Below, one piece after another: positions 8,890 through 55,700 of a DNA stretch of 64,000 nt. Below the pieces are notes generated by a model. The model saw only the letters and a program-made list of their open reading frames with translations. It ran no database searches and was not told where the DNA came from. The DNA is from Schmidtea polychroa. Taxonomy: Eukaryota. The position numbers and the translations under genes are program-made. The first letter of the stretch is position 1, and each line of letters starts with the position of its first letter. The DNA lies in assembly GCA_044892525.1 (NCBI GenBank), contig CM097886.1, forward strand, positions 182,206,312 to 182,270,311. The letters are read 5' to 3'.

Positions 8890-11200
8890 GACGCAATAGA
8901 AAAAAATTTAACAGATGGATGACTTACAGGCTTACGAAACTTTTCACATTCGACTATGGAATGGAGATACAATTGATGTTTTTCTTGCGGATCTGTAGCG
9001 ATTGGCTACGCTGGCCGGGATAAATGATGACGGTCTCCTCAAGAGAGCGCTTGTAGTCGAACTCCTATCAATGGTTTCCCACCAACTTAGAGCTTCAACT
9101 ATAATCTTCAAAATGAACCTTTTCGAAGTTTTTCAACAAGGTCGAGCACTAATATCCGATCAAAATAGCTCTGCTTCTCTAATTGGGGTGAAGAGAAGGG
9201 GTTTGGGCCGGGTAAATAAATCAAACTGTGCTATGGATGTGGAAAATCTGGACATTTCAAAAAAAAGTGTTGGACATGCGGAGTCAAAGGCCGTTCGTCC
9301 AGACAAACTGGAGCGCCAGCGGTTTTTCAGTGACGTCAGGGATGGCACGACTACTTGTCATACTCAGAGTGAATGGAAAGTCGTGCATTGAACTAATTGA
9401 TTTCGGATGTTCCATTGTTTCCGGGATCTTTGCAGAAAGAAGTGGCGAAGCCAGAGATGTTGTTACAGACGATGGAAGAAGAGCCCGATGTATACGCGAG
9501 GATCAGTGTCATTTATCTATTTGAGGAACAAGTTTTGTGTTAAAATTGCTAAGTAATTCCGGGGTGGATGGTATTTTAGGTATCGGTGTGATTGAACGTC
9601 TTGGAGGAGTCTCGATTGACAATTATGGCATAAAGTTTAGTGAATGCATCTGAGTATCTATGGCGGCATTAGTTCAAGAACAAGTGACAATCGATAACGA
9701 ATTTTGACGGAGACAAGCGTACGGTATCTTGGAAATGGAAAGACATACCCTTTATTTTGCGGAACTTTGCCAAATACGCAATTAAGCCTGAAGTGCGACA
9801 AGAATATGAAGCTAAAGTGAAGCGATGGATAATGGAGGGCTGGCTATACCCCGTTGAAAAAGACAGGCTGCGGCATTCTTTCTTTTTTAGCTGCAGTACA
9901 AGAAAACAAGGAGAAGGTTCGACCCATTCTTGACTTTAGGGAACTTAATAAATTCGTGAAGAGACACATTAGCGATAGTGATGTTTGTGGTGAGAGTCTA
10001 AAAAGATGGAGACAGATGGGAGAACAGTTATCGATGCTTGACTTAAAAAATACTTTTCTGCAGTTACATGTAAGCAAAGATCTTTGGGAATTCCAAAAGA
10101 TTAGCAACAAAAAGTAAACATGCTATCTCACAAGTCTAGGATTTGGTTTTAGTTGTGTTCCAAAAATAATGTCCTTGGTGTTGAGAAATGTGCTGAACCT
10201 CGATACCCGAATCCAGAATGCGACAGATTACTACCTTTATGACATAGCTATTAAAACGAGTTTCGTCAATATTGATGAGGTAGTGAAACAGTTGGCTCGG
10301 TATGGATTGGTAACAAACTCAGCGGAACCGTTAGTTGATACAAGTTCTTGGTCTTAAAATTGAACTCAATCTTCGGTTGTACGTACCTGTTATGTTCTAG
10401 ATGAAATGCAGTTGACCCAATTGAAGGTAAAGTTACTCAGTGTAAATTGTCTTCTATTTGCAGAAATCTTATTGTGCAGTGGCTTGCAGTTAACCAAGAG
10501 AATTGGGAATGGTACAAATTGGGATGATCTCATCGGAGTAGAAGATCCAGTCAAAGGGAGCTGGTCTGTAAATAGCATGGATCACTGTACTTTATGGTGC
10601 GATGATAGCAGTTAGTGCTAAGTGTCATATTAGTGATAAATGGCCATGTCGTGGAGGATACAATTTGGCTCAGGAAATGTGATGAAAATTCACATATAAA
10701 TCTCGCTGAGCTCGATGCAGTTCTTAAAGGCGTGAACTTAGCAATTAAATGTAGCGTTAAAAGAATCGAACTGATGATGTATTTGGTCACGGTGGTAGGC
10801 TGGCTGAGAACAATTTTTAACAATGAAGGCAGGATTCGTGTCTATGGGATTTCAGAGACTTTGCTTGGGAATAATAAAAGAGATCATCGAAAATGACAGA
10901 ATTTCCATTTATAAACAATTGGTGAAGTCATCGTAAAACCGAACACATATTGGCTGCGTGACCTTATCGTCAGAACAAGTAAAGAACTGTCACAGCAAAC
11001 ACCGTTTTGGACTGGAAAAATTCATTTATTTCGTTCATTTGGAAAACCCAGATACCCCCGGAGATGAGTCAAGTGTGAAAATGGATAATTAGGGGTCGAT
11101 ACAAATTGGGAAAGACTAGCTGTAGATGTCACGCACTACGAGGAATCTATTTCCTAACTATCGTTGATTGTGGGCCTAGCAGATCTTGCCTTTATAGCCT
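8890..11200 (+). mobile_element. Decayed Ty3/Gypsy-type gag-pol
   Basis: Fragments in order across frames: CCHC knuckle CYGCGKSGHFKKKC (~9225-9270); protease-like LIDFGCS; RT (VRPILDFRELNKFV, SMLDLKNTFLQ, RLGFGFSCVP, degenerate YLYDI); RNase H (TLWCDDS, HINLAELDAVLKGVNLA); integrase (WERLAVDVTHY...IVDCGPSR, ~11105-11185). Many stops and frameshifts. Confidence 0.88.
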
Positions 11201-13039: not shown

Positions 13040-13688
13040 TAATATTAGTCAAAGGAAATTGGTATGGTTGAACAGCAAATGGAGAATCGAGCACAGGAAT
13101 AATACCATTAACTTAGTAAGGAGTCCCATGGAAAAACCCTGACTTAAAAACAAATTAATTAATTATGTAGTGTGAAGCACGAGCTTGTGGAAACCACGAA
13201 TCAATAGAAAACGCGAGCACTGTGTAAAACTCGATGCGCATAGAGATCTGAGAAGTGAGGAAAGCCGGTGAGATTAATAAATGATCAGGATGTTTTAATT
13301 GTTGTGGACCCAATCAGACCCGGAGTGAAGGAATAATTGTTGAATAGCACTTTAATTGTTTAAAAGAGTGCTGTTGAAAAGCGAATCGCCAGTTAGTTGA
13401 ATAAACCAAAAAAAGAATTTGTGAACGTTTGAAAAGCTTTGAGAGAAACGAAAATAAAATTGAAGTGAAATTAAAGAAAATTACAAATTATCTTACGATG
13501 AAAGATGATTACTCATTGGGCAACCTACCTTATAAATAATTTCGATGAAAAGCTGCAAATACAGTGACAAGTTGTAATCTTGATCAAAATTGAATAGGGT
13601 TCTGTGTTGGGTTTTAGTTATTCGATTGCAATAATAAATGACAGGAAGAGTCAGAAACTAACCAATTTCATTGATTAATAACCCAACA
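13040..13688 (+). mobile_element. LTR-like remnant ending in the TGTTGGGTT...AATAAA...GAGTCAG...AACCCAACA module
   Basis: The 3' module (13605-13688) matches the ends of the other LTR-like units; the 5' boundary is approximate. Confidence 0.45.
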
Positions 13689-13776
13689 ATAATATATATT
13701 AGTATAACATGAATAAACAAGAAAAAATTAAAATGAAGTGTTCCCTACATATTCTTATAACGGTTTGTGTTATAAT

Positions 13777-13899
13777 TAGAGTTGCCACACGTCCTACTTT
13801 CAGTAGGACAGTTCTACAATTTGGATATTTGTCATATGTACTACATGAAAGGATTATTGATTTGTCCTACTTTGAGCCTGTCAACATGTGGCAACCCTA
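13777..13899. mobile_element. hAT-type MITE, 123 bp
   Basis: TIR TAGAGTTGCCACA / TGTGGCAACCCTA (1 mismatch); perfect 8-bp TSD GTTATAAT (13769-13776 and 13900-13907). Confidence 0.92.
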
Positions 13900-13970
13900 G
13901 TTATAATTGGTGGCTTATCTTACATTTATTCTCGTGAGGTAATCGTACAAAATAACATGTAAAAACAATT

Positions 13971-14097
13971 AACTATTTACAATGAATTACGTCATATGCC
14001 AAAATAAAAAGCACAATACAGGCATGTTCAAACAGAAACAAAGTTGTCGCTATACAAAGTTTATTTATAACAGTTTTATCATTTCAGTCATTAGAAT
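13971..14097. repeat. 127-bp direct repeat, copy 1 (3' flank of ORF 14150-14569)
   Basis: Ungapped-length match with high identity to 16964-17090; contains a minus-strand AATAAA. Confidence 0.9.
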
Positions 14098-14149: not shown

Positions 14150-14569
14150 TCATTTGATTTCTTTTGAATTATTATTTATTTCTTGAAGTGGAACTCGCTT
14201 CTCAATTGTCATTTGGTCGGTAAGTTCCTTTCCGAGAATTTCGTCAATTTTCTTATCGAATTTCTCGGCGAATGAAAAATTCACTCGACAACTTTTTCGA
14301 ATATCATTCTTTGAAATCGGTTTTCGTTTAATAGATTTTTGATTTTTTAATTGAGAAATCTTGGAGAAATCCTCTTGAACAGTCAGTGGATTACTCATGT
14401 CACTTTTGCAATTGACTGGCATGAATAGTGGATAGCCAATTCGATTGGTCCAAATTGGATATTTTGAGCAAAATTCTGTCGCGCAAATTCGCACTATCTC
14501 GTCCAACATTTGGACGTTGGTGTCTGATTTACGAGAAGAATTGAATAAATTGAAATTGGGAGCACTCAT
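14150..14569 (-). CDS. Intronless 139-aa protein of unknown function, paralogue of 26766-27032; candidate cell-cycle regulator
   Basis: True ATG; N-terminal ~50 aa align with the 26766 ORF; C-terminal RVPLQEINN D-box; upstream promoter-like motifs and a downstream AATAAA. Confidence 0.75.
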   Translation of the reverse strand: MSAPNFNLFNSSRKSDTNVQMLDEIVRICATEFCSKYPIWTNRIGYPLFMPVNCKSDMSNPLTVQEDFSKISQLKNQKSIKRKPISKNDIRKSCRVNFSFAEKFDKKIDEILGKELTDQMTIEKRVPLQEINNNSKEIK

Positions 14570-14599: not shown

Positions 14600-14720
14600 T
14601 CCAACCGTTTTTATACAAAAATTTTCACGGCGTGCGCGCGTGTGTGTGTGAGATTTCGCTGAATGGCTTATAAAGCTCTTTCATTGGTTAATACCTATTG
14701 TGCAATAATTTTTCAAACAA
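14600..14720 (-). promoter_or_regulatory. Putative promoter of ORF 14150-14569
   Basis: AACGG (14605-14609), a CG/TG alternating tract (14631-14650), TATAA (~14670), CCAAT (14683-14687) and TTTGAA (14712-14717) on the minus strand. Short motifs are common in AT-rich DNA. Confidence 0.4.
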
Positions 14721-16963
14721 AGCGCTGTGCTTTTTTTCCAGTTGATTTTTATTTTTAAAAAAATCGATAAGAATTTTTAAAAATTATTTTCTGAGGATTT
14801 TTATAAAACGTCTAAAAAAAATTTTATTGTACAAATTTTGTTAGATAAATTATTTTCATTTCCCCTTTAAAACTTAAAAAAATTTATTCATTGCGTAACT
14901 TATTTTGATTTGGACTCATGCATGACAGTACGTGGCAGGAATGAGTAGTTAATATGCAAGTGTGCGGCGTGATAATTGCGATTGCGTAATCATTTGATTG
15001 TAATCCGGGTACTCAAAATCTATTGTTATAGAAATAAACGTAGAAATATACATAAACAAAAGGATGGAGATTGGCCACTGTTTGAGTTGCTATTGTTAAT
15101 TTATTTTTCACAATGGTTAAGGATTGTTTTGTTTCAATTTTTATTTAAATTTTTTTTAATTTCTGATGTATATCAACAAATATTTCATTAATTATTTGCT
15201 CTCCTCAAATTTATAGTCAAGCCGCCCTTATTTTAAAAATTATAATAAAATTACATAAAAAATATTTTTTCTATATAAATATTAAATTGAATATTTTTAT
15301 GAATATTGCCAAGCGAAAATTTCTAAGAAACGAAAGAAAAATCTAGTTAATAAATTTGTATTAGGGAAATAAACGAGGCCTCCCTATTAGGATCCTATAT
15401 GAAATTGGAGAAATAAATAAAACACAAAAATATAAAAACTCACACATGAGATCAACATTTGGATAGCAAACATTTTAAAATCAAAATAATTTTCAGTGTC
15501 AAATGATTGAACTAATTGTCCGCCTCCCCCTTCCTCCCCCCATCAAGTTCACAGCGATAAACTTTCTATATGTGGCCAATTTCTATAAAATTCTCTAATT
15601 GTTCAGCAATGCTCGCATAGTTTTCATTGAGAGAAATATAGAAATTTATAAATTTTATTCGCGGGTTTGATAAAAAAATAATTATTTTTCGCTAGCACTA
15701 AAAGCATTTTATTTGTTAAAAATTTCAATTAAAAAATTTCGATTTTACTAGATAATTTTACAAATAAAAAAAATAATAAAAAATTAAAATTGCAAAAAAT
15801 TCGACATCATTTACATATATAGATTTGTGTTGAATATTGAAGCTTTTGTACAGGAGGTTTGGAACTCCGTGTTAAGAGACCTTGTAAGGTGATAGTTGAA
15901 AAATCCAAAGTAATCTTATCAAACTGAAAACCAAATCCATGTAACTACCTTTGTCAATTATTACATTATTTCTGAAATCCTGTGAAATTTTCTTCTGCTG
16001 CACTGTTCAAGACGGAACCAAGAGAATTATATAAGACAAAATATTCTGCGAAAGAAATCCAGTTTAGTTATGAATAGTGATGTTAATTTCTTTGTGTAAA
16101 TTATTTTAGTACAAATGAGTTCTGGTGACCCAGAGCACATTATTCACTGGATTCCCATAAATTGGAAAAAAAACCCTCAAAACTGAAAAAACTAGAAGTT
16201 TCATTATCAATATCATGAAGGTTAAGTTTTTTAAAAAACACAAAAAAAGTAGTCCGAAGTAGTTATATAAACTGATCTTGTAGGTCAGTGCAAATCCTGG
16301 GGCACTTGCCCCCTCCCTGAATTTCCCAAACCATTTTATTTTTCGATTAATTTAAACACATTTTAATAGATGCTCTCAAACAATGTTGGAAAAACTCAAG
16401 ACAAAAAAAATTAATAAAAAACTTTAATTTAATGAGGCTTCCACATTTTTTTTAAATTTTATTAATTATATCTGGAAATCAATGATTTCAAATCATCTTA
16501 TTTTTATAAAAGCGTTCAATATTAACTGACGTTCTGGTTTTAAAAAAAGTGTTCTATTTTGTAAATAAACGGAAAAAGTCCTATTTTGTATAATGCCCCA
16601 AATATTTATTATACAAATGCCTTTTATTTTCAACTCTCTTCCCCCTAGAAAAATTGTCTACTTGGTAAAAAAATAGTTTTGCCCCCTACCCTGGAAATTA
16701 CTGTGGACGCGCATGCGACTTGAAGTCTTTCAAAATCTAGATTGTATGTTTACATGAGATGTATTATTTAGTTAAAACCACACAATGTGTAGACTCTGTT
16801 CTTCAATTTTTGGCATCAAAAAGTCCTAAATCATTTGTCATCAATGCCATCAGGTTAAAGTTTGTCCATGTTCACTTTCAAAGAAATAATATCAAACGCT
16901 ATTTTGGGCTTTAATCGCACACATTGCTGACACTTTCTGTGAAGCAAATAGTAACATTTAAAA

Positions 16964-17090
16964 AACTATTTACAATGAATTACGTCATTTACCAAAATAA
17001 TAAACACAATACAGGCATGTTTAAACAGAAACAAGGTTGTCGCTAAACAAAGTTTATTTATAACAGTTTTATCATTTGATTTATTAGAAT
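16964..17090. repeat. 127-bp direct repeat, copy 2
   Basis: Matches 13971-14097; no adjacent paralogous ORF detected. Confidence 0.9.
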
Positions 17091-20843: not shown

Positions 20844-22258
20844 GAGTGGCGGATTTAACGTTTAAAGGACCCGAGGCGGAAAATAATTCTAGGCACCCTT
20901 AACTCTCCCCCTCTGGGTAGAAAATTTGAAAATATAGTTTACGCATTTGAAAATGCGCGTAAGAATGGAGAATGATCGTTCTCTTGTTGCATTGCAGGTT
21001 GGTAATGTTAAAAAGAAATTTTAAATAGTTTCAACATTTGAAAAGGTAGATTGCAATCCACCATTATTTATTTTGTAAATTTTGAAAGGGCACTTAATAT
21101 TTTCCTCTTTAATGAATTTTAAGAAATGGTGAACTTCATCCCTGAAATAATATATATCAATGTCATTTTTATACAGGTCAGATAATTTCAAAATACATTC
21201 GTCATTGCTCATAGAATGATTGAAGAATGGCTCAAAATCATATAATACCAGTTTGTAAACAGCAGATCTAGTAGTAATTTCCATTTCAATTTTATCACAA
21301 ATTGCGTTATGCATTTCTACCACAAATAATTCTAGCCCCACCAGGCGTACATCATTTGTAAGTGATTCATTGAACTGTAATTTTCGTGTCTTACGTCTTT
21401 CTTTATAATTTATATTATCAGTTAATAAAGCTGCCTCATGTTCTCTACTTTCAAAATCATCTCTAACGTCCATTATAAATTGAGAAAAAAAATTTTAAGA
21501 GATTGACGCATTGAAATAAATTTGTTTGAACTTGTTGTAATGAACGACTTGTACTGTTTATTCTTTGCAACAATTAATCCCAGAGAACGATTAGCAATGC
21601 ATTTTCGTACGTGTCTAAACAATTAAATATTTTTTTGCTTCTAATTTAGTCATTTGTTTTTCGTTAACATTTTCGCTAATACTAATAAGAACTGCTTTTA
21701 CATTTTTATAATTGAACTGTAAAGCAGAAACTGCATCAGCTCTTTCTGACAATTTAGTATTATTAACTCTTTATGAGTTTTGAATTATTATTGCTAAAGC
21801 TATCAACAAGTAGCTTCCATCTGTATGTAGACGAAGAAAAAAATACATAAGTGTTTTGTATTAATTCGAAATAATAAACAGCTGCCGAAAAGCGCAATTT
21901 CCAATTAAATTTATGGAGTGACTTGAACATGGAATAAAAGTGGCAGATTTGTTTAAATTCTTAATTCTAGCTTCTAAACTTGCCAAAAAAATTTTGCCAG
22001 AAAAATTTTGTATTTAGATATTTAATTAAATTAATATATTTTAAAACGTCTATATAAGTTAACTGCTATGTTTGTTCTACTTTTATATTTTTTGTATTAA
22101 TTTCTTTTTTACCTTTTAAAATTTAAATCATGGGTTAAAATATAAAAATAAACACCTACAAATTAGCCTATTAGTTACCCACTTTTCCAAATAATTGTTT
22201 ATTGTAGTTTGGGGCCCGAGGCACTAGCCTCATGTGCCTGTGCGGAAATCCGCCACTG
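20844..22258 (-). mobile_element. Internally deleted hAT element (1415 bp) with the C-terminal half of a ZMYM1-like transposase
   Basis: TIR (G)AGTGGCGGATTT / AAATCCGCCACTG; perfect 8-bp TSD CCTTGGAG. ORF 21021-21473 is followed by FLTLPTCNATRERSFSIL (hAT dimerization motif) and preceded by TKLSERADAVSAL (TRWS-like). Confidence 0.92.
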
Positions 22259-26765: not shown

Positions 26766-27032
26766 CTATCCGATAATATTCCCATTGATAATTGACATTG
26801 GTTTTCTTGGACTTCTTAATTTGCATTTCATGACGCAATCTTTCTCTTTATTGTCTTTGACAATTATCTTGTTTTCCTTATCAAAATTCGGGTACGCAAC
26901 TCGCTTTGACCATTTCGGATATTTGTGCTGAAAATCATATTTTGACAAGTTGGTAATTTTGTCAATGTCTTCCGATAAATTCAAGTTTTCATTTTGTGAA
27001 ATTTGAAATAGATTTCTAGCTGGAACTTGCAT
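26766..27032 (-). CDS. Intronless 88-aa protein of unknown function, paralogue of 14150-14569; candidate Cip/Kip-like regulator
   Basis: True ATG; RNLF motif; DFQHKYPKWSKRVAYPNF block shared with the 14150 ORF; SPRK CDK-type site; RKPMSIIN tail; two CCAAT boxes upstream (27106-27110, 27123-27127). Confidence 0.72.
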   Translation of the reverse strand: MQVPARNLFQISQNENLNLSEDIDKITNLSKYDFQHKYPKWSKRVAYPNFDKENKIIVKDNKEKDCVMKCKLRSPRKPMSIINGNIIG

Positions 27033-28658
27033 GTTTTCAATGAATAATCATTTCAATGGAATTCCGCTATTTATTTAATGCGATTGTTTGTGTGTCTCGA
27101 ATTTGATTGGATAGTTGATAAACCAATCGGACAAATGAAATTCACTTACATATTATATGCATATTGAAGAGTAAATAAATGAAAATCAAGAAAATATGAA
27201 CGGAATAATTTTTTTGTCGAATCTATATAGATTTTATTATAATTTTAATAATATATTAAATCTCAATTTTTTATTGTTATAATTATAATTAATTAATAAT
27301 AATTTTCTATTACGTAAGGACAATTATAATATTGATAAGGAAATTTTAAAATCTGATAAGCACAATAATTACCTATAAACAGGAAGAAAAGTATTAACAT
27401 TTTATGAGTAATAAAATGCACAATTATTCATATAAATATATTTTTTTGTTTCTGAAATGTATTAAATAGAATGAATTGTTGTAATATTCATTTTCTAAAG
27501 GATTCATGACTAGAAATGTTTCAACCATTTGAGACTGTCCAGATTCATTCTTTTACTTTAATTGAGTTCGGAGTTAACAGAAGGTCGGTAAGAAGTGAGA
27601 ATAGTTATTAGTCTATAAAGGAGGGTAAAAGAAAAAAAGAAAAACGATAACCCAATCTTTATGAAATACTGGGTGAATATAAATATAATCATTGGGGCCT
27701 TGTTCAAAGGAAAAAATCCATACAAACTACAATTAATATTAAAAAAGATTTATTTTCAATAAAATTGGGCTTTATTTTTCAATGATAAATTCCTAATTGG
27801 TTTATGAAGAATAAAATTAAAAAACCGACCCGTGGAAAAATTGCAGTTCAAAGAAGTAACAACTCTATTAACTTCATATCTATAAAAAACATATCTATTC
27901 TGATGCTTAATTGTTATAAAAAAACAAACCACCAAACTACTGACAAATTAAAAGTAGAAATATTCCCATACATCTATGAGTAATTCGGAATTACACCGAA
28001 TATTTTTGTTGACCAAAAAACAAATAACTAACAAGTGAAACTTGTTTGCATACTACTGTTATTAGGATTTATTCAATTTAGTTTTTGTAAAATATTAATT
28101 AACATCCCAGATTACATAATCCGCCAATAGACCACGTCATTTCAAAAGTATGTTCAACAAATTATTTGCATGCAAAACTAGCCAAGTGTGCCATTAATTG
28201 TGCTTGCAATTTATACCGTATCCCAATGAATAACATCCTTTATTTGGAATGGGTTTTAGATACATTTTATAAAATAATAAGCCAGGATTAAACTGTGAAA
28301 GAATGGAAGGGAGTAACAATAAATTAATTCTAAGTAACAATACAACCGTATTATAACGTGTACTTATTCTAGTGAATTACAAACTGTCTTTACCTAATTG
28401 TTTTAAGCTTTTCACTCAGTAGCACAAATTTTCAAGACACTTCTAACTGTTTCGGTCAATGACACTAGTCGGAATTTTCTCAAAACATTTTTTTTATAAA
28501 TCAACTAAACAGAGCCGTCCTACCTTGGTATACCGATACAATCCTGGTGTTTGTTTCAGTGGCATAGCGAGCATAACTTGGTGTCTGAATATAATACTTT
28601 TTGTCGTTCTCCCGAAAAATACAAAGTTGCTTTTGTGGGGCCTCGAGAAAATATTATA

Positions 28659-29692: not shown

Positions 29693-31308
29693 ATATTTAA
29701 TTACATTATATTTACTTTATTATTACAATTTAAAACAGACATTAAAATTATTATTTTAAATATTCCCCATTTATTGAATTTAGCTTGTAACCAAATTTTG
29801 ATAAAACAATATATTTTTTTCAAATTTCTAAAAATAAACTTATACAAATAAATAAAAGATGAGGACTAGACGTTTTAATAGATGGAAGATATACACTAAG
29901 AGTCACAAAATACGAATATCAATATAGTGTTTAACGAATAAAATCAATATTGAAATGTTTTTTGTTAAACTGCACCCTTTAGATAGATTGTAGAATGTTT
30001 ATGAGACTGAACGGATTGATATTGAAATTATTTATTGTTCGCCGAATCAAATTGCTTGGATTGATGTTTTTTTTCGATCTTTTACTGTAGGTTCTTTCTG
30101 TATTTGCTTGGAACTGTTTTATAAAATTTGCTTACAGTGAATGTATCGATGGGCCAACCCTCATCGTCACCATGTAAGGCTATCTCGTTGATGTTTTCTT
30201 TTAGTAGTGTCAATTGTTTGCAATTCGATTATGGATTGCGCATATTTTCGAGAATTTTCTATTATAACCTGATTAAATTTGTTTTAATTGTATTTTTCAA
30301 ATATTTTTATTCATATTTCTTGTATTTTTAATCAAAATTTTATATCCATTTCCTATTTTTAATCATCGCCATAAATTTGAATTTGTTTTAATTGTATTAT
30401 TTATTTTTGTTTATTTATTTGTGTCTCTTTCTTGTAATATTTTTTTTGTTTATTATTGATTTTTTAAACTTCTACACTTTCGATTTTGGTGTTGTGTTGG
30501 CTCCTTTTATGTGGTTTAATTAATGCTTACTCGTGTTTTGATTTTAACTTTACTTAGGACTATGTCTGTGTGTCTTAAACAAAACTCGGATACTAAATTC
30601 CAGCAAAGAATTCTAAAAATCAAAAATTCATTTATTTTAAAAGAAAAATTTTATTCAAATATGAAAAATGTAAAAAAATATTAAAAATTTTGATTTTTTA
30701 AGATTATTCTAATTACATTTTAAAAAACATTTTCTTATAATCTGAAATAATTCTTATTTTAATAGAAAATCTCACCAAAATTCAGTTTGAATTAGTTTGC
30801 TTCCAGTGTGATAGGATATTATCAGCACATTCAAACAAAATAACGAAAATGCTTATTTTTATTCAACTTTATTTTAAAGTTTTTTCGAAAAAATTTATTT
30901 ATTAATATAATTTATTCACATTTGATCTGTTATTTTCGTTTTCATTTATCCTCATTTAAAATCTAAATTGATCAACTGACACAAATATTGCTAATGATAA
31001 TCTTCCATGAAAATTTATGTTTTATATTATTTAAAATTTATTTAAAAAAATTGTAAAAAATATAATTATTTATAAGTTTTAAACTCTATATCAAAAATAA
31101 TATTTGATTAAGAAACAAAAGTTGTTTTAATAATATTATTTAATTTTAATTAACAAATTATTTATTTCACATGCTTCCAAATTATTTAAATTTTATAAAA
31201 TCGATTTTAAATTTTAAATCATTAGATTCTTTCGAGTTATTTAATTTTATTTCATCATGGTATGCTTTTCTTATTTTCTTCGTATATATTTAATTGTATA
31301 CATTTTAG

Positions 31309-33633
31309 CGATTTAATTCCATTAGATGTCTACAATCAATGTATTGAATTGTTTTTACAAATTAATTTTACTGGTCCTAAAAATAACGAAATTGAATTGA
31401 TATTGGATAATAATAATGAAATAATTAAGTTAATTAATGATGATTTAACATGTGAAGGAGAAGTTCCTTTTATTAAAACGAAAGGAATTGTTCTTTTATG
31501 GATTGCAAAATCAGTTACATTGAAAATGCGAGAAATGAAGCAAGATATTTACAGAAGCTGTTTAGGATATATGAAATGCATATATTTACATCAAGCAACA
31601 TTAATGGATGAAAGATCAGCTTTATTAAAATCTCAAATGCAAGAGTGCTACAATCAAGCAATGGAATGTAAAGAACATGCTGTAGAAATAATTAATCCCG
31701 TTGATGAATTACAAATGTTATTGCTTGCAAGTCATTTTCATATAAAATTCTACGAATATCAGAAATCCGAAGAAATTTTTAATGATATCCAAAAGTTATT
31801 AGGAATATCAACTGAATTTCGAGGTGCATTAGGAAAACGATTAAAAACCCAATATTACACTCACAGTCAGTTGTATTTAGCTTTGTCCAGACAGCCTTCA
31901 GAAACCGCAGAGAAAATAAACGAGATTTTAGAAGGAGCTCGTGTAAAGAATTTACCAAACGATCAAATGGTTGAAGACGAAATTTTACTCGATGAAACGG
32001 AATTTCTTCAAATCGATGATAACGAAAAACCGTTGATTATTAAGCCGACTCTCGCAGAACAAGCAAGTCTCGTGTTGCAATCCTCAATTCATCGACTGAA
32101 GCACGCAAGAGACGACACAACAATGGAACAATGCTCAGAGATTCTTTCATGCGCTCTTGGAAATAATTCCACTAGATCGTCGACTTGGTCGTTGATAACT
32201 GATGCTCTCTTGCAACGCTGTGAACTACCAACGAAATCGTCGAGACGAACCGAGAAATCGTTGATGCAAATGGAAGAAATATCAACCCAATTCACTCATT
32301 CGATTCCCAGCGCTGAAATTCGAGTCAATTTGTTTTTCTTGTCGCGACTGCCATCGATTTGGGAGGTGCAATTGAAATACGGGAGAATTCTAATCGGGAT
32401 GGGAATGACTAGATCGGCTCTCGATGTTCTGTTGCCATGGCAACAGTGGCCAACGATTATCGAATGCCTGATTCAGATTGGTGAACGTGGACGAGCCGAA
32501 CGGATTATTCGTGAGCAAATCCAGGAAATCGGCGAAACCGCTCAACTTCTCTGTTGCCTTGGTGACGTTACAAAAGACCGATCGCATTACGAACGAGCCT
32601 GGACGGTTTCCAAGGAAAAATCAGCCCGAGCGATGCGCAGTCTCGCTGTCCACTACATGTTTGTCGATTCTGATCATTTCAATGCGGCTCAATGCTTTGA
32701 GAAATCTCTCTCAATCAGTCCGTTGCAAGTGGCAACCTGGTTCACTTACGGCTGTTGCTGTTTGCAATTGAAAGAATATCGCAAGGCCGTTTCGGCTTTC
32801 AAGCAATCCCTGAGACTGGAACCGGACGTGAGTTGATTCCCATGTTCCAGTTTGGTTGATATTGATTGTAATTTCAGAATTTCGAAGCCTGGAATAACTG
32901 TGCCAGCGCAATGGTTGAACTAGATGACAAGTAAAACTTTGCTTCATTTTTATTGGCTGATTTTTTCCCTATTTTATTCAATGCAATTTCATTTATTTAT
33001 TCTATATTTAGAGTAAGCGCGCTCGCCTTGCTAAAGGAAGCAGTCAAATACAACTATGAAAACTGGAAAGTTTGGGACAATATTTGCATCGTGTCGTCAC
33101 AAGTTGGAGAGTTTAATACAACAATTAAGGCATACAATAAAGTGATGGACCTGAAAGAAACTCACCGGGATCCAGCAACATTGGCCGTTCTAGTTAATGC
33201 AGTTGTTAGTGGGAAAAATGAGGAAATTCGGCCTAAACTGAAAACATTATTTGCTCGTATCTCAAGCAAGGACGGCAGGGATCCTCGAATTTGGATGGTT
33301 TATTCTGATTTATTGGCCAACGATGTCGACCAATCAAATGAAATTAAAATGAAAGTTTTACAGTGCTTATCACGTGCTCATCATGGCATGTGTGCTAGTG
33401 GATGGGAACTCGATAAAGCTCAATGCAAGCGTGCAATTCTGTCTGCATTAAGATTAGTCGACAAAGCTATCGAATATGATATCAATTTTACATCAGCCAA
33501 ATTAGCAGTCAAAACCGTTAAGGCAGTAATGGACAGTTTGAAAAGTTCACAGGTTCAACAGTTAGATATAGAAGTTCAGAATTTATTAACAAAAATTGAT
33601 GAAGCAAATGTACAATTAGCTGAAAAGATTTAA
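31309..33633 (+). CDS. TTC27: Tetratricopeptide repeat protein 27 (5' exon(s) not resolved)
   Basis: Exons 31309-32827, 32878-32930 and 33012-33633 in phase (introns 50 and 81 nt). Motifs match TTC27: LFLQINFTGP, FRGALGKRLKTQ, RSARAMRS, PLQVATWFTYGC, LEPDNFEAWNN, KYNYENWKVWDN. Confidence 0.95.
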
Positions 33634-45706: not shown

Positions 45707-48334
45707 ATGAAAGTTCTCGAAATAATAAAAAGAGCACTTTCAAGATTTACAAAATTCATTTTCTCATGCGCTGGTTCCATATTGATGATTGTGGTTTACA
45801 CTTTGATGGGGGGGTTTATGTTCAAATTAATTGAAAATCAACAAGAGAGAAGGATCAAACTCAAAATGAAAAACACATCTCAACGGTTTGTTGAAAAGTT
45901 GAGTAATTATATTTTGAATTCATTGAAGGAAAACGTCAGTCTGGATCCGTCGGATTTGAATAATTTCTTTCTTAAGTACACGGAAGAAGTGAGCAAATTG
46001 AAAAACGAAGGATGGAATGGGACCTTTGGAGAAAATGAATATAATTGGACTCTTGAAGGATCTATTTTATTTTCTCTGACTGTTATTACAACAATAGGTT
46101 CGTTTTATTGTAAATATTTTCATTTAATTAATTTTTTATCATGTAAATATAATTCTTACTGGGGAAAATTTCAGTGAAAATTTTGCCTATTTTTTACTAA
46201 TTGAAAAACATTTTTATTCGTATGAAAGTTGACATCATGAAAATCATTTTTATTTAATTTAAAATTTATATTCAAATATTTTTGTTTTTATAATTATTTT
46301 AATTAATTTTGCTCAAATAATAAATTTAAAATCTGTATAGATTTGTCGTTTCTATCTGATGATGACATTGAACCTGTTGAAATATATCGTATAATTGATG
46401 TTTGAATGGCGTTTTTTAAGTATTTAAACTATTGTCATGTTTATATTTATGTCATAATTTCCTTATCTATGGGCGCTGGCAGGATTTTTTGAAAGGTGGT
46501 GCAAAATAAAACAAATCTATGGGAGGAGAACTATGTCAAATCCTTTTAGTCCCTCAACATATTTTCAAGAAAATCGAAGCTCTATGAGACCAAAACAATA
46601 ACTAATTGACTATTTTGGTGGAAATTTTCGAATATAGACTGCAGTCTACTGACCTACGGTAATATTGTGTTGTATAAAAATCTTATACTGTTTTGCAAGA
46701 GTTATTTTATTATTTTGTTTTAGACTTATATCTTCGATAAAGATATTATATAAATGAATTTTTTAGAACGAAAGTTTGTTTTAATGTGCCAATAAAAATT
46801 TCAAAAATTTTGTATTGTATTATTTAGAAAGTGAAAAGTGGTGCACTTGCACGACCTAAAGGGAGCATAAATTCAAATTTTCAAATTATCGAAATCAATT
46901 AAAATTAATATAAAATTTGGAAAAGATAAAAGTCAGTATTTTTCGGGTAGAGGAGTGATAATCGGTGACAAATAAGATTTTGAAGACGAATAAAATAATT
47001 TCAAATTGATCAGAGGTTTATGAAAGGGCTAATGACCAAAAACAAATTAATTAAGTTTCAACGAAAGCTAATAATCAAAGGATACCCAATTGATTGTCAG
47101 ATCAAAGGATTGCCTGGGCGAGGGAAATATTAATGACCACTAAAGTACATATAATCAGAGAGCAAAAAACAGAAAGAGCCAGTTGGTCAAAGAGGGAAAA
47201 TTATAATAACTTAGCATAATTAATCAAAGAAGGTGAACGAGAGCAATTCAGAAAAGAATGATAAACCAAATTGTGCTTTGACTTATTTTTGGTCATTTAT
47301 ACAGCTATTGTAATCCAAAACAGTTTGCAAGTTAAAAATAAAGATTTAGTTGGGATTAGAGTTCTATTTCCTTGATTGAATCCCATCAACAATCATTTAA
47401 ATATTGTTTATATTAATTATATTTTATATTCTTTTTCATTATTCAATTTTGTAGGATATGGTGTAGCCACACCAAAAACGAGATGGGGAAAATTCTTGAC
47501 CATTGTATACGCGATAATCGGAATTCCATTTACATTTTTGTCCCTGTCAAATATCGGTCAACATTTTAGCAAAGCGTTTTGTGGTTTTTATCTTTTTTTA
47601 AGAAAGTCAAAATTTTTGAAAAAACAACGGGAAAATTTCAATAGATTGATCAATATAAAGAGCTCACTTCCAAAGCAACCAGAAAAAACTTTGAAAAAAG
47701 TTTCATCGAAATTAAGATACAAGAGAAAGCATCCAAAAAGAGAGGGACAACTTGTCAATTGGAATAATATTGACTCGGATTTGTTTATTTATTCAATTGA
47801 ATCGGATGAAAGCAGTTCCAGTGATGACGCAATTCCGGAACTTGAAGAAGATTTCAATGAATGGCTGATGAAAAATCAAAGTGTCAACGTCAGTTATCTA
47901 ACTTACGATCGGGAGATTCCAGAAGAAACAGAAACTGTCGAACAAGTAAACCTTTCTTATTCCCAAATAAGAATTCCGATAGCAATCACTTTTGCAATTA
48001 TGATTTGTTACATTCTGATTGGAGCGCTCTTTTTTACGATCTGGGAAGACAATGATTACTTGAAATGGGCTTACTTCTGTTTCATAACATTATCAACAAT
48101 AGGATTTGGAGACATCGTTCCAGGTTGAGACATTTTATTTTCATTTTTAAATTTATATTACTTTTGTTTTAAGGCACAAAAATCGATTCGGATAATCCAA
48201 AAGAAAAATTAATTTTCGTTGTTTTTTATGTAGTTGTGGGCCTGTCGGTCTTTTCAATGTGCTTCAAATTGATGGAGGAAGAAATACGATACAAGTGGAA
48301 AACGTTTGTAGATAAAATCAGAAATAGAGAATAA
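45707..48334 (+). CDS. Two-pore-domain potassium channel (K2P, TWK/KCNK-like), 406 aa
   Basis: Exons 45707-46097, 47455-48123 and 48174-48334 in phase. P1 WTLEGSILFSLTVITTIGYG; P2 YFCFITLSTIGFGDIVPG; four hydrophobic segments. Confidence 0.95.
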
Positions 48335-52700: not shown

Positions 52701-55700
52701 TCATTCATCACCATCAAGGATTTCCTCATAGAAAATCGACTGCTTGAGAAGCTTGCATTCCTCAACAATTCTCATGTCAGCTTGCTGTCGGTATATTTGT
52801 CCGTTGTGCTCATATGCAAATCTGTATAAATGGCAACATAAATGAAGGAGGAGATGGAAATCATGCTAATTACGGCAATCTGAGCACCCACAAATGGCCC
52901 GGTTCCAGTTCGATTGGCGTGTCACTACCGGGAGTGAAAACCGGCGTTTCTCCTGACGGTCCCGGCCGGACTTTTGGTTGGATATACAGTTTCAGTAGAT
53001 TGCTATTGGGAACCGCAACATAGATGCGCATCAGCTGGGCGAGATAAGTGGAACACTGGCACGGGAAATAGAGAGGCACATCACGAGTCAGTAGCCCACT
53101 GACAGCCTCTTTTACCTGATGACTCGCCATGGAACCTTGCATCATGTTGTCGGGACCTGCGAGGAAAAATCGATGTCCAACTGGACATTCCATCTCAAAT
53201 CCGAGGAAGGCTTTGACAAAATTGCCCGCTGCAAACGCTAAACAACGACGATGCCATTTTATTGTCAGTATTGATTTTTCCTGGAAATGTTATGTTACCT
53301 CGCTTGACTCGTTGCTTGCGCACCTTATTGATTCTAGTCTTCAACGGGACGTCCCAAGGCAGCAGGAAATTGCTGCCATGTACAAATCCGCTATATTCGA
53401 GTCCAGATGAGTGAGTGTACGAGAAATATGGACCGGAATCCATGAGATTCCAGCTGGGGTAACGCGGCATCGACATCGGGTCATCAGTGAGGGTGAACAT
53501 GCCGGGGAATATCGATTTTTGAACAGGGCCATATTCGATTGGTCGATTGCTAGGAGCGATCGATGGTGTGCTGTCGTCACTGGGAGCGCTAGCACTCTCG
53601 TTGTCATCGGTTTGCGAGTCCCCTAGTTCTTTCTCGCGTTCCATTTGTTCCCCTTGTTCCTCCGCTATCAGTCGGTCATCTGTACTCGATACCGACGTTT
53701 CCAAGGTGCGCCTAGAACGGGGTAACATTTGCTTGGTCTGAGACAACGACAAATCCGAGGGGCTCATTGACTCCATTCCGTGCTCACTCTGGTCACTGAT
53801 GTCATCGTCTTCGTACGGCTGCAATTTGTCGAATTTCTTCTCGATCGATATGATTTCCCCGCCGGCGTTATCCGGGTTTATCGGCACGATTCGAGTATTT
53901 TCCGGAAGCGCAACCCGATTGAACCGCAAACAACACAGCTCTGTCATTTGCTCATAGAAAACATAATTTGCCTCTTTGTAATCGAATGGATCCCGCCGGG
54001 TTCCTTGACGACGACCACAATTACAGGCGGAAACCAATTGCACTTCCGAGCAATGTTTCATGTAGGGCAAATTATTGCGTTTCTCTTCCGATGGATTTTT
54101 AACGATGTCCACAATGGAATTATCGCGCCCAAATAGACCGTATTTATCCTCCTCACCGGTACTAGAACAAAATTTTTTTGTCAACAATATCAACATATCG
54201 AATGCACACCAAGGATTTCTGGGATTTAGATCGCAACAACATTTCGATGATAATTTAACTTTATTTTATTATAAAGAAAAAAGGAAAGGAAAAAAAACAA
54301 AAAATAAAAAACTTAAGAAAATCATAAATATTATTAAGAAAAAGATTAGACAAAAATAAAAATGAAATTGAAGTAAAAGGAAGAGAAAAAAACGCTTGAT
54401 AAGGAAAAGAAAAAAGAAAGAAACGAGAAATAAATAAAATTAGAAAAGAATTGAGGAAAAAGAAAAATAAAGAAATAAAAAAGAAAACAAAAAAATGGAA
54501 AATAAAAAAGAAAATATTAAAGAGCAGTGAAAAACACAAAAAGAAAAAGATTAGAAATGAAAAAATGATTAGACAAAAAAACGAGGTAAAAAACTAAAAA
54601 CACAAGAAAAAATGAAAATAAAAAGATAAAAAAAACAAAAAAGAATAAAATGCAAAATTTACAAAAAAGGAAAGGAGCAGTGAAAAAAGTGAAAAACACA
54701 AAATGAGTAAAGAAAAATAAAAGTCAAAACAGAAAACAAAAAATAATAGACGGAAAATAAGAAAAAATAGAAATGAAAAAAATTAAAAGGAAAAATGAAA
54801 TAATGGTAAAAACAGAACAACGAAACTAGAAAATAAAAAATAATAAAAAAAATTGACAAAAAAGAAAAAATGAAATACTTGATAAGTAGCAGTGAAAAAC
54901 ACAAAACAGAAAAATATATAACAAATAATAATAAAAAGAAAGAAAAAAGAATAAAAAACAATGAAATATAAGAAAATAAAAGTAGAATTAACAATGAAAG
55001 AAAGCGAAAAGGAAAATGGGTAAATAGAGGAATGGAAATATAATTTGCTATTTGGCTGGCGCGCTACAAATGAAATTCCAGAAATTGGCGTGATAGATAA
55101 ATAAATATGCAAACTTATTGCCATATGTAATCTGCTGATTGGCGCCTTCCCAGCTGGCAGATTGCTCCTCTGGCAGCAAGTGCACCTCGTGCTTGCACCG
55201 CTGCCTGGTGACGGAAATGGCTTCACAGATCTGCCTGCCAACAGCCCAAACTTTATTCAGATTCTCTGAGAGCTTCCTCACGCAGCTCAGCAAATTGGGC
55301 CCCTTAGCAATCGACAGGAGAATCTGGCGCGCTGCCTTGGTCTAGCGGGACGGGTACACTTAATTAATTATCCAAGGGAAATCCAAGTCAAACTTTCTCA
55401 TAATGAACATCGCGAGAGTACTGAGTGGGCAAGCCCTCCTTGTAATGCGTTTCCGCTACCGACAGCGCCAGCTCGCAGCCCTTCTTAAAGAATCCAAATC
55501 GGTGATTGAAAAGCGAATCCATGAATCGGAACTTTTCCGAACAGAAAAGATTGTAAAGTTTGTGACAGGCCTGGAGAAATCGCGAGAAATTATTTCCCCA
55601 TAAATTTTAATATTTTTTTTATTTTAAAAGTGCACAAAAATTTTTTTTAAATAAAATAAAATTATTTAAATTTTTTAAAAAATATAAGTCTAAAAATAAA

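What the first reader, a model, noticed from the sequence alone, without database searches (positions are those of the whole stretch)
14150..14569. Paralogous pair of small intronless proteins resembling highly diverged Cip/Kip CDK inhibitors with D-boxes
This ORF and 26766-27032 (12.5 kb apart, same strand) share about 18 identities over the first 50 aa: M..P..NLF...D.I.......F..KYP.W..R..YP.F. Both end in RxP[LM]xxIN (RVPLQEINN, RKPMSIING) (seen). Established: Cip/Kip proteins have an RNLF cyclin-binding motif followed by a helix and F-x2-K[WY]-N-[FY]-D; RxxLxxxxN is the APC/C D-box. The 26766 protein has RNLF and an SPRK CDK site. Inference: a lineage-specific family of unstable cell-cycle regulators, probably missed by automated annotation. 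The YPxW..R..YPxF extension is not canonical Cip/Kip, so the family could be new.
Basis: partly seen in the sequence, partly recalled or inferred. Interest (0 to 1): 0.78.

Follow-up and report, generated by a model that had tools for sequence, protein, structure and literature searches.

The report
Hidden mini Cip/Kip CDK-inhibitor gene pair
Two small neighbouring genes in this planarian-type genome encode proteins whose first 40-50 residues match the cyclin-binding half of the Cip/Kip CDK-inhibitor domain of tapeworm cki-2, which matters because free-living flatworms are published as having no CDK inhibitor at all.

Summary
ORFs at 14150-14569 (139 aa) and 26766-27032 (88 aa), both on the minus strand, are true paralogs (BLASTP E=5e-11). 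They share 18 identities in the first 50 residues and an R-x-P-[LM]-x-x-I-N motif. They are the only copies in the genome. One further member (P0001, 87 aa) exists in a public assembly of another species. Codon-position patterns show protein-level selection.

Pfam's CDI model does not hit them, and the genome has no canonical CDI gene. Parasitic-flatworm CKI sequences published in 2025 supply a bridge:
- The family profile matches the N-terminal CDI half (P-A-R-x-L-F, linker helix, F-x-K-K-Y) of cestode cki-2.
- Smith-Waterman shuffle P is 5e-5; hhalign gives 93% probability (P=4e-7).
- HMM ranking is top in both directions among about 980 decoy ORFs.
- The match holds between the two anchor motifs alone (0 of 10,000 shuffles).

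The supposed D-box also matches a motif conserved after KWNF in trematode CKIs. The FDF hairpin and the Tyr-bearing 3-10 helix are missing, so these would be miniaturised CKIs.

Expression and cyclin-CDK binding remain unverified. A ribosomal uS17 lead was tested and rejected. Homology is likely (about 0.65); inhibitor function is inferred.

The parts
14150..14569 (-). ORF A: 139-aa family member, stop codon included. Intronless, start Met conserved with its relatives. Has FNLF in place of RxLF and carries a C-terminal extension.
   Evidence: rank 2 of 979 ORF segments with the merged CKI HMM
14420..14569 (-). ORF A residues 1-50: conserved N-terminal block. Order: P-N-F-N-L-F, predicted linker helix with L-D-E-I-V-R-I, then F-C-S-K-Y-P-I-W-T-N-R-I-G-Y-P-L-F. 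This is the CDI-like module.
14300..14326 (-). ORF A residues 82-90, RKPISKNDI: positional homolog of the C-terminal motif of B and P0001, and the best match to the trematode-CKI R-[KQ]-P-L-S PSSM.
14171..14197 (-). ORF A residues 125-133, RVPLQEINN: second copy of the motif, near the C-terminus. It also fits the D-box pattern R-x-x-L-x-x-[ILVM].
26766..27032 (-). ORF B: 88-aa family member, stop codon included. Best-preserved CKI-like copy.
   Evidence: SW 53, P=5e-5; rank 1, E=0.006; rank 1, E=4e-4
26883..27032 (-). ORF B residues 1-50: CDI-like block. Contains P-A-R-N-L-F (cyclin-docking RxLF, residues 6-9 at 26997-27017), a predicted helix at 19-37, F-Q-H-K-Y-P-K-W and K-R-V-A-Y-P-N-F.
26781..26807 (-). 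ORF B residues 76-84, RKPMSIING: conserved C-terminal motif, preceded by SPRK (a minimal CDK consensus site).
14641..14687 (-). Putative promoter elements of A: CCAAT box (14683-14687) followed by a CA-repeat (14641-14650), about 115 nt upstream of the ATG. The same CCAAT then ACACACA order lies upstream of B and of P0001.
   Evidence: sequence read directly; function inferred
27088..27127 (-). Putative promoter elements of B: inverted CCAAT (ATTGG, 27123-27127), CCAAT (27106-27110) and ACACACA (27088-27095), about 80-95 nt upstream of the ATG.
   Evidence: sequence read directly; function inferred

Best explanation
ORF A and ORF B are a tandem pair, 12.5 kb apart, of intronless genes. They encode miniaturised, highly diverged members of the Cip/Kip (CDI-domain) CDK-inhibitor family, closest to the cki-2 lineage so far known only from cestodes.

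Shown:
- The genes are real coding paralogs.
- Their conserved N-terminal block of about 50 residues aligns colinearly with the cyclin-binding half of the CDI domain. That half comprises P-A-[RK]-x-L-F (the RxLF cyclin-docking motif), a linker helix of about 20 residues with the [LV]-D-[EQ]-I-[IV]-x-x-I signature, and F-x-[KS]-K-Y where canonical CKIs have [KR]-[WY].

Inferred:
- The protein docks its RxLF on the hydrophobic patch of a cyclin and lays the amphipathic helix across the cyclin.
- It uses the family-specific aromatic stretch K-Y-P-x-W-[ST]-x-R-[IV]-x-Y-P to contact the CDK N-lobe, so blocking substrate docking or restraining the kinase.
- It lacks the F-D-F hairpin and the Tyr-bearing 3-10 helix that plugs the ATP site. 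It may therefore be a docking-site blocker or partial inhibitor rather than a full p27-type inhibitor.
- The conserved distal R-x-P-[LMI]-S-x-I-N motif corresponds to a motif of trematode CKIs. It could be a further CDK contact or an APC/C D-box degron.
For: Paralogy and coding:
- BLASTP E=5e-11 for A against B.
- Third member P0001 found at E=1.2e-5 in an exhaustive HMMER search of 1.84 billion proteins.
- Identity by codon position is 0.51/0.59/0.31, and dN/dS is about 0.23.

Link to CKIs, using sequences from Tables S1 and S5 of PMC12693960:
- Smith-Waterman of the Echinococcus cki-2 residues 8-51 against B scores 53 (null 22 +/- 4.1, P=5e-5). Against P0001 it scores 48 (P=1e-4); against A, 33 (P=0.04).
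- hhalign of the family against the cki-2 profile gives probability 80%, P=1.4e-5, score 30.6, against 9.6 +/- 2.4 for shuffled columns.
- Against the merged CKI profile (5 cki-2, S. mansoni, C. sinensis, human p27) it gives probability 92.8%, P=3.9e-7, over 36 columns.
- The accepted cki-2 reaches only 25% against the Smp/Csin/p27 profile.
- The CKI HMM ranks B first (E=4e-4), A second and P0001 fourth among 979 ORF segments of the window. The family HMM ranks the five cki-2 peptides 1-4 and 6 among 984 sequences, best E=1.1e-5.
- With the RxLF and KY anchors left out, 0 of 10,000 column shuffles and 0 of 26 circular shifts reach the real score; z=5.

Other support:
- AF2 predicts a helix at B residues 19-37, where the linker helix should be (low confidence).
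- A PSSM built from the trematode motif picks exactly the family's conserved distal motif (P=0.003, 0.001 and 0.0002).
- The genome has no canonical CDI hit.
- The literature reports no CKI in planarians. Those searches used cki-1 queries only.
Against: - Pfam CDI (PF02234) gives no hit at E<=10 for any member.
- The hallmark [WY]-x-F-D-[FL] and the downstream W..V...P-x-F-Y-x-P elements are absent.
- A lacks the basic residue of RxLF.
- Pairwise alignments to S. mansoni, C. sinensis and human p27 peptides are not significant on their own (P=0.06-0.77). The link to canonical CKIs therefore runs through cki-2.
- Only three family sequences exist.
- The reference peptides are short (34-44 aa).
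- cki-2 was chosen after looking at five CKI groups.
- Scaling the CKI-HMM score of B alone from 979 segments to my estimate of about 1e7 six-frame ORFs in the genome would give E of about 5. It is about 0.01 only at proteome scale.
- There is no microsynteny: the TIM21 gene is on another chromosome, and there is no wasf2, tubb or tyrosine kinase in the window.
- Transcription is not demonstrated.
Confidence: 0.65

Rival explanations
1. A lineage-restricted orphan family of small, largely disordered proteins. Its resemblance to CKIs is convergent or accidental: a short RxLF-like motif plus an amphipathic helix. The proteins do something unrelated to CDKs, binding some other partner through the conserved K-Y-P-x-W...R-x-x-Y-P stretch and the distal R-x-P-L-S-x-I-N motif.
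For: There is no Pfam, NCBIfam or Atlas assignment. The most conserved stretch in the family (KYPxW..R..YP) has no counterpart in canonical CKIs. ORF A has lost the Arg of RxLF. The CKI similarity covers only about 36 columns.
Against: The colinear match includes the helix in register, independent of the anchor motifs. Reciprocal HMM ranking is specific for cki-2 among about 980 decoys. The block sits at the extreme N-terminus, as in cki-2. A second motif matches trematode CKIs.
Confidence: 0.22
2. Decaying or non-functional remnants: ORFs that survive in an intergenic, repeat-rich stretch but are not expressed as proteins. They could be relics of an ancestral CKI gene.
For: No run on record as RNA holds the stretch, and the exact proteins are absent from a 15-billion-protein collection. 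The region is rich in repeats and transposon fragments.
Against: Two paralogs and a distant-species member keep the same start, similar length (88 and 87 aa) and both motifs. Third codon positions are saturated while first and second are conserved. CCAAT and CA-repeat elements are shared upstream of all three. ORF A lies in single-copy DNA.
Confidence: 0.08
3. A very divergent mitochondrial ribosomal protein uS17m: K-Y-P-x-W-x-K-R would correspond to K-H-P-L-Y-G-K-R, and R-x-P-L-S to R-P-L-S-K.
For: The only three PDB matches to the family profile at E<=10 are bacterial S17 chains, E about 0.12. Pfam S17 finds only the cytosolic RPS11 gene in this genome, so no uS17m is recognisable. The lengths are similar, about 87 aa.
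Against: With an unbiased S17 profile from 70 bacterial genomes, HMMER scores are about 1 bit. hhalign gives probability 0.34% and score 13.5, inside the shuffled range of 9.8 +/- 2.0 with maximum 16.8. AF2 predicts helices, not an OB-fold barrel.
Confidence: 0.02

Closest known systems
Cestode cki-2 (for example Echinococcus EmuJ_001155400, Taenia TsM_000212200; Wendt & Collins 2025, PMC12693960 Table S1)
   Same: The CDI segment sits at the N-terminus. It has P-A-R-R-L-F (family: P-A-[RK]-x-L-F), a helix with V-D-E-I-I-D-R-I (family: L-D-[EQ]-I-[IV]-x-x-I), and F-R-K-K-Y (family: F-x-[KS]-K-Y). It uses Tyr rather than Trp after the Lys. Tandem duplicates occur in Hymenolepis.
   Different: cki-2 proteins are about 180-215 aa. 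They keep Y-Q-F-D-[FL], W-S-W-E-A-V and V-P-x-F-Y-x-P (the full CDK-binding half). Their helix is one turn (4 residues) longer. The planarian proteins are 88-139 aa, replace the hairpin by Y-P-x-W-[ST]-x-R-[IV]-x-Y-P, and end with R-x-P-L-S-x-I-N.
Trematode cki / cki-1 (Schistosoma mansoni Smp_199050)
   Same: RxLF, a linker helix (T-L-E-T-I-I), [RK]-F-x-x-K-[WY], and a conserved R-[KQ]-P-L-[ST]-x-x-[NQ] element downstream. Functionally shown to restrain stem-cell proliferation in schistosomes.
   Different: Pairwise similarity to the planarian proteins is not significant on its own. The proteins are much longer (about 250-290 aa), with W..L.QPE..FY..PPR, a PCNA/NLS-like tail, and TIMM21-tubb microsynteny that is not seen here.
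Vertebrate p21/p27/p57 kinase-inhibitory domain (Pfam CDI, PF02234; p27-cyclin A-CDK2 structure 1JSU)
   Same: Order and spacing of the elements. From the F of RxLF to the aromatic residue after Lys is 28-29 residues in the family, against 27 in p27 (counted from the Table S5 peptides; family). The block length of about 50 aa matches the 49-position Pfam model.
   Different: No G-P-V-D after RxLF, no W-N-F-D-F, no P-L-E-G-x-Y-x-W, and no Y88-type 3-10 helix. The Pfam model does not hit.
APC/C D-box degrons (R-x-x-L-x-x-[ILVM]-x-N; from my memory the human PLK1 D-box reads R-K-P-L-T-V-L-N-K)
   Same: R-V-P-L-Q-E-I-N-N (A) and R-M-P-L-S-L-I-N (P0001) fit the pattern.
   Different: B has Met at the Leu position. 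The motif is near the C-terminus rather than the N-terminus. Trematode CKIs carry the same kind of motif within or after the CDI region, so it may be a CDK-contact element. No degradation data exist.

Membership tests
Cip/Kip CDK inhibitors (CDI domain, PF02234) | Cyclin-docking [RK]-x-L-F motif at the start of the domain | tested here: met
   B has R-N-L-F (residues 6-9) and P0001 has K-I-L-F. A has F-N-L-F, with the basic residue lost. The preceding P-A is shared with cestode cki-2.
Cip/Kip CDK inhibitors (CDI domain, PF02234) | Linker helix of about 20-22 residues between RxLF and [KR]-[WY], at conserved spacing | tested here: met
   AF2 predicts a helix at 19-37 in B, at low confidence (pLDDT about 75 locally). 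The spacing is 28-29 residues, against 27-28 in S. mansoni, C. sinensis and p27 and 33 in cki-2. In-register similarity to cki-2 without the anchors: 0 of 10,000 shuffles, z=5.
Cip/Kip CDK inhibitors (CDI domain, PF02234) | Hallmark [KR]-[WY]-x-[FY]-D-[FL] beta-hairpin that binds the CDK N-lobe | tested here: not met
   Only K-Y is kept. It is followed by P-x-W-[ST]-x-R instead of x-F-D-F.
Cip/Kip CDK inhibitors (CDI domain, PF02234) | Downstream P-L-x-G...W..V and the P-x-F-Y 3-10 helix that enters the ATP site | tested here: not met
   Absent from B and P0001, which end at 88 and 87 aa. There is no convincing counterpart in A's extension. Y-P-[LN]-F at residues 46-50 could be the P-L element, but this is not shown.
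Cip/Kip CDK inhibitors (CDI domain, PF02234) | Significant match to the curated Pfam model | tested here: not met
   There is no CDI hit at E<=10 for A, B or P0001. No CDI hit in the six-frame genome search either.
Cip/Kip CDK inhibitors (CDI domain, PF02234) | Profile-level homology to bona fide family members | tested here: met
   hhalign against the merged CKI profile gives probability 92.8%, P=3.9e-7. The reciprocal HMM ranks are top in both directions. Smith-Waterman P=5e-5.
Cip/Kip CDK inhibitors (CDI domain, PF02234) | Binds cyclin-CDK and inhibits kinase activity | not testable with these tools
   The one complex prediction (B with the cyclin box of L005) gave no verdict.
APC/C D-box substrates | R-x-x-L-x-x-[ILVM] degron that confers APC/C-dependent instability | tested here: inconclusive
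   The pattern is met in A (RVPLQEI) and P0001 (RMPLSLI) and not strictly in B (RKPMSII). The same motif matches a trematode-CKI element. Instability cannot be tested here.
Ribosomal protein uS17 (PF00366) | Match to the S17 profile and an OB-fold | tested here: not met
   HMMER scores about 1 bit. hhalign probability is 0.34%, within the shuffled null. AF2 predicts helices. Pfam gives no hit.

The most novel reading that the evidence does not exclude
Free-living flatworms have not lost Cip/Kip inhibitors. Planarians keep a vertically inherited, miniaturised cki-2-type gene (here duplicated) that escaped BLAST, OrthoFinder and Pfam. If so, cestode 'cki-2' is the ancestral flatworm CKI. The published case that flatworm parasites gained their CKI by horizontal transfer, because free-living relatives have none, is then weakened. 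The idea that Cdh1 is the only brake on the neoblast cell cycle would also need revision.
Probability: 0.5. Interest if true: 0.88.

Novelty: new variant of a known kind. Interest (0 to 1): 0.8.

Why it matters
Planarians are a leading model for adult pluripotent stem cells. Several papers state that they lack every CDK inhibitor: Grohme 2018 and Pearson & Sanchez Alvarado 2010 as cited, the 2021 Dugesia cdh1 preprint, and a 2026 Schmidtea preprint. A 2025 Science Advances paper uses the absence of cki from 37 free-living flatworms to argue that parasites acquired cki by horizontal gene transfer. A candidate CKI in a Schmidtea-type genome turns 'how do neoblasts leave the cycle without a CKI?' into a direct RNAi experiment. 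It also offers a test of the transfer hypothesis. Finally, an 88-aa CKI without the ATP-site helix would be a natural minimal version of the kinase-inhibitory domain.

Tried and rejected
1. uS17m idea. The family profile's only PDB matches were bacterial S17. I fetched a motif-biased S17 set and then an unbiased one. HMMER and hhalign with a shuffled null showed nothing beyond chance. Rejected.

2. Complex prediction of B with the cyclin box of the A/B-type cyclin in L005. Verdict 'no answer' (score 0.01). This is not evidence either way.

3. Expression.
- The look-up of sequencing runs found no holder on record as RNA.
- Read laying showed that X15 and X17 are genomic DNA.
- X1 looks regionally covered, possibly RNA, but its contigs break at the same repeat edges as the DNA runs.
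- X2 has one 159-nt contig over the 3' end of ORF A.
- Result unresolved.
- Runs of a second organism each hold 0.04 of the words. That could be an ortholog about 10% diverged or a repeat; I could not check.

4. Searches that found nothing:
- Exact-sequence look-ups: A and B are not in the protein collection.
- Word-indexed homolog searches found nothing beyond P0001.
- The ESM Atlas gave nothing usable for A and B. For P0001 it gave a DUF4277 hit at 0.94, not supported by Pfam and treated as chance.

5. Pairwise Smith-Waterman against S. mansoni, C. sinensis and human p27 peptides: not significant.

6. Synteny. TIM21 is on C1 at 206.3 Mb. The window's neighbours are a TPR protein, a K2P channel, SMG8 and transposon fragments. 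No support.

7. Other points:
- The source species of P0001 shows no DNA similarity to this genome, and the run id appears in no paper.
I did not try another route.

Full report
OBSERVATION.

The two ORFs are present exactly as described, both on the minus strand: ORF A at 14150-14569 (139 aa) and ORF B at 26766-27032 (88 aa).
- BLASTP of the pair gives 31% identity over 87 residues, E=5e-11.
- RNLF, SPRK, RKPMSIING (B) and RVPLQEINN (A) are all there.
- The window is AT-rich (about 30% G+C). It lies on contig C2 of a 781-Mb assembly.
- Searches with either protein and with the family profile find only these two copies in the genome.

ARE THEY GENES?

An exhaustive HMMER search of 1.84 billion representative proteins with the two-sequence profile found one relative, P0001 (87 aa, E=1.2e-5).
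- It is encoded on a 911-nt contig of a public run from another species. That contig has no DNA similarity to this genome.
- P0001 has the same start, nearly the same length as B, the same N-terminal block, and R-M-P-L-S-L-I-N near its end.

The three-way alignment shows that B's and P0001's motif aligns with an internal R-K-P-I-S-K-N-D-I of A. A therefore carries a C-terminal extension with a second copy of the motif.

Further signs of real genes:
- Between A and B, identity in the N-terminal block is 0.51, 0.59 and 0.31 at codon positions 1, 2 and 3. NG86 dN/dS is about 0.23, the pattern of a protein under purifying selection.
- All three loci have a CCAAT box followed by an ACACACA run 80-115 nt upstream of the ATG.
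- ORF A lies in single-copy DNA between high-copy repeats.

Transcription itself could not be shown.
- No holder of the stretch is on record as RNA.
- The laid runs are DNA or ambiguous.
- The exact proteins are not in the 15-billion-protein collection.

STANDARD ANNOTATION FAILS.

- Pfam and NCBIfam give nothing for any member, even at E<=10, including CDI PF02234.
- The ESM Atlas gives nothing usable.
- The genome has no six-frame hit to CDI at E<=1.
- AF2 with the three-sequence alignment is of low confidence (mean pLDDT 58). It predicts a long helix at residues 19-37 of B.

A FALSE LEAD.

The family profile's only PDB matches at E<=10 were bacterial ribosomal protein S17 (E about 0.12), with a tempting K-H-P-L-Y-G-K-R / K-Y-P-L-W-T-K-R match. 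Pfam S17 finds only the cytosolic RPS11 gene in this genome. I collected S17 from 70 bacterial genomes without reference to that motif.
- HMMER without filters gives about 1 bit.
- hhalign gives probability 0.34% and score 13.5, inside the shuffled-column range of 9.8 +/- 2.0 with maximum 16.8.
- The idea is rejected.

THE LITERATURE SETS THE STAKES.

- Planarians are reported to lack all CKIs.
[quoted passage not shown] From this they argue for horizontal transfer.
- Their genome searches were tblastn with three cki-1-type queries. They included Schmidtea polychroa, S. nova and S. lugubris.
- Their supplementary tables give the parasite CKI sequences. I used short N-terminal pieces of these (34-44 aa) as references.

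THE TEST.

Pairwise Smith-Waterman against the S. mansoni, C. sinensis and human p27 peptides is not significant (P=0.06-0.77). A semi-global profile comparison is suggestive (P=0.0015; between the anchors only, P=0.006-0.01).

The cestode paralog cki-2 is much closer.
- Echinococcus cki-2 reads S-P-A-R-R-L-F ... V-D-E-I-I-D-R-I ... F-R-K-K-Y-Q-F-D-F.
- P0001 reads F-P-A-K-I-L-F ... L-D-Q-I-I-D-I ... F-A-K-K-Y-P-L-W.
- A has L-D-E-I-V-R-I ... F-C-S-K-Y.
- B has P-A-R-N-L-F ... I-D-K-I-T-N-L ... F-Q-H-K-Y.

The numbers:
- Smith-Waterman scores are 53 for B (null 22 +/- 4.1; P=5e-5), 48 for P0001 (P=1e-4) and 33 for A (P=0.04).
- An HMM of five cestode cki-2 N-termini, run without filters against all 978 stop-to-stop segments of at least 30 aa in the window plus P0001, ranks B first (E=0.006), P0001 fourth and A seventh.
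- hhalign of the family against cki-2 gives probability 80%, P=1.4e-5 and score 30.6. Shuffled columns give 9.6 +/- 2.4.
- Against a merged profile (five cki-2, S. mansoni, C. sinensis, human p27) hhalign gives probability 92.8%, P=3.9e-7, over 36 columns (family 4-39).
- As a yardstick, the accepted cki-2 reaches only 25% against the Smp/Csin/p27 profile.
- The merged HMM ranks B first (E=4e-4) and A second.
- In the reverse direction, the family HMM ranks the five cki-2 peptides 1-4 and 6 among 976 decoy ORFs plus 8 CKI peptides, best E=1.1e-5.

None of 10,000 column shuffles and none of 26 circular shifts reaches the real score (z=5). Circular shifts keep helix periodicity, so this null is the stricter one.

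THE DISTAL MOTIF.

Trematode CKIs carry R-[KQ]-P-L-[ST]-x-x-[NQ] about 10-14 residues after K-W-N-F. A PSSM of eight such 9-mers, scanned over the part of each family protein after residue 50, picks exactly the conserved motif:
- A: RKPISKNDI, then RVPLQEINN.
- B: RKPMSIING.
- P0001: RMPLSLINI.

Shuffle P values are 0.003, 0.001 and 0.0002. Even so, it is the next conserved element in both groups. The motif also fits the loose D-box pattern in A and P0001, so a degron role is not excluded.

WHAT IS MISSING.

- The family has no [WY]-x-F-D-[FL] hairpin, no W..V element and no P-x-F-Y helix.
- B and P0001 stop soon after the distal motif.
- The most conserved family-specific stretch, K-Y-P-x-W-[ST]-x-R-[IV]-x-Y-P, has no clear counterpart in CKIs.
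- A has lost the Arg of RxLF.
- There is no synteny with the parasite cki neighbourhoods.
- The one complex prediction (B with an A/B-type cyclin box of this genome) gave no verdict.
- A CDK could not be fetched.

STATISTICAL CAVEAT.

The scores are convincing for a pre-selected candidate and at proteome scale. They are not convincing for a blind scan of every six-frame ORF of a 781-Mb genome. Scaling B's CKI-HMM score from 979 segments to my estimate of about 1e7 ORFs would give E of about 5. The case therefore rests on several things holding together:
- a conserved coding family;
- family-level profile matches in both directions;
- in-register helix similarity independent of the anchors;
- the N-terminal position;
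- a second colinear motif.

VERDICT.

The pair is most likely (about 0.65) a miniaturised, highly diverged Cip/Kip homolog of the cki-2 type. It keeps the cyclin-docking half of the CDI domain. That it inhibits CDKs, and how completely, is inference. It is a new variant of a known kind, in a clade published as lacking the family. It is directly testable by RNAi, binding assays and wider profile searches.

Noticed in passing
window 13971-14097 and 16964-17090: A 127-nt direct repeat (92% identity) with start-to-start spacing of 2993 nt brackets ORF A. Each copy lies next to a very high-copy element (13400-14000 and 16200-16800), where summed contig depth in DNA runs reaches thousands against about 25 elsewhere.
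   Followed up: partly
L005:1096-2331 (G000 C2, about 46.73 Mb): An intronless 411-aa cyclin that scores equally well against human cyclin B1 and A2 (E about 1e-20). It has D-R-Y-I-F-I-N-W-L where cyclins have M-R-A-I-L. A close paralog fragment is in L009 (C3, about 105.2 Mb).
   Followed up: partly
L008:1090-2022 minus strand (G000 C1, about 208.33 Mb): A single-exon, 311-aa cyclin B-like ORF that starts M-K-R-R-G-L-S-D-L-T-N, a canonical N-terminal D-box.
   Followed up: no
whole genome: Pfam Ribosomal_S17 finds only the two-exon cytosolic RPS11 gene (C1, about 37.79 Mb). No mitochondrial uS17m is recognisable in the six-frame search.
   Followed up: partly
window 27039-27053 minus strand: A four-codon upstream ORF (ATG ATT ATT CAT TGA) begins 21 nt before the start codon of ORF B. 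It would be a uORF if it lies within the 5' UTR.
   Followed up: no
window 10551-10896, 21021-21473 and 61466-63420: Mobile-element debris. An RNase H-like ORF of a retroelement lies near 10.6-10.9 kb. Transposase-like ORFs lie at 61.4-63.4 kb, with a weak DUF7813 hit. The 150-aa ORF at 21021-21473 has no family.
   Followed up: partly
window 31262-33633, 47376-48128 and 53195-54196: Neighbouring genes: a TPR-repeat protein (plus strand), a two-pore-type potassium channel exon (Ion_trans_2, E=5e-22) and SMG8 (minus strand, E=4e-41).
   Followed up: yes
P0001 (L004:102-365): The ESM Atlas feature search puts P0001 next to bacterial DUF4277 clusters (score 0.94). Pfam does not confirm this, and A and B show nothing similar. 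It is probably a chance hit.
   Followed up: partly
PMC12693960 Table S1: In Hymenolepis the cki-2 gene is itself a recent tandem duplicate, with copies about 17-20 kb apart. This parallels the tandem pair seen here.
   Followed up: no
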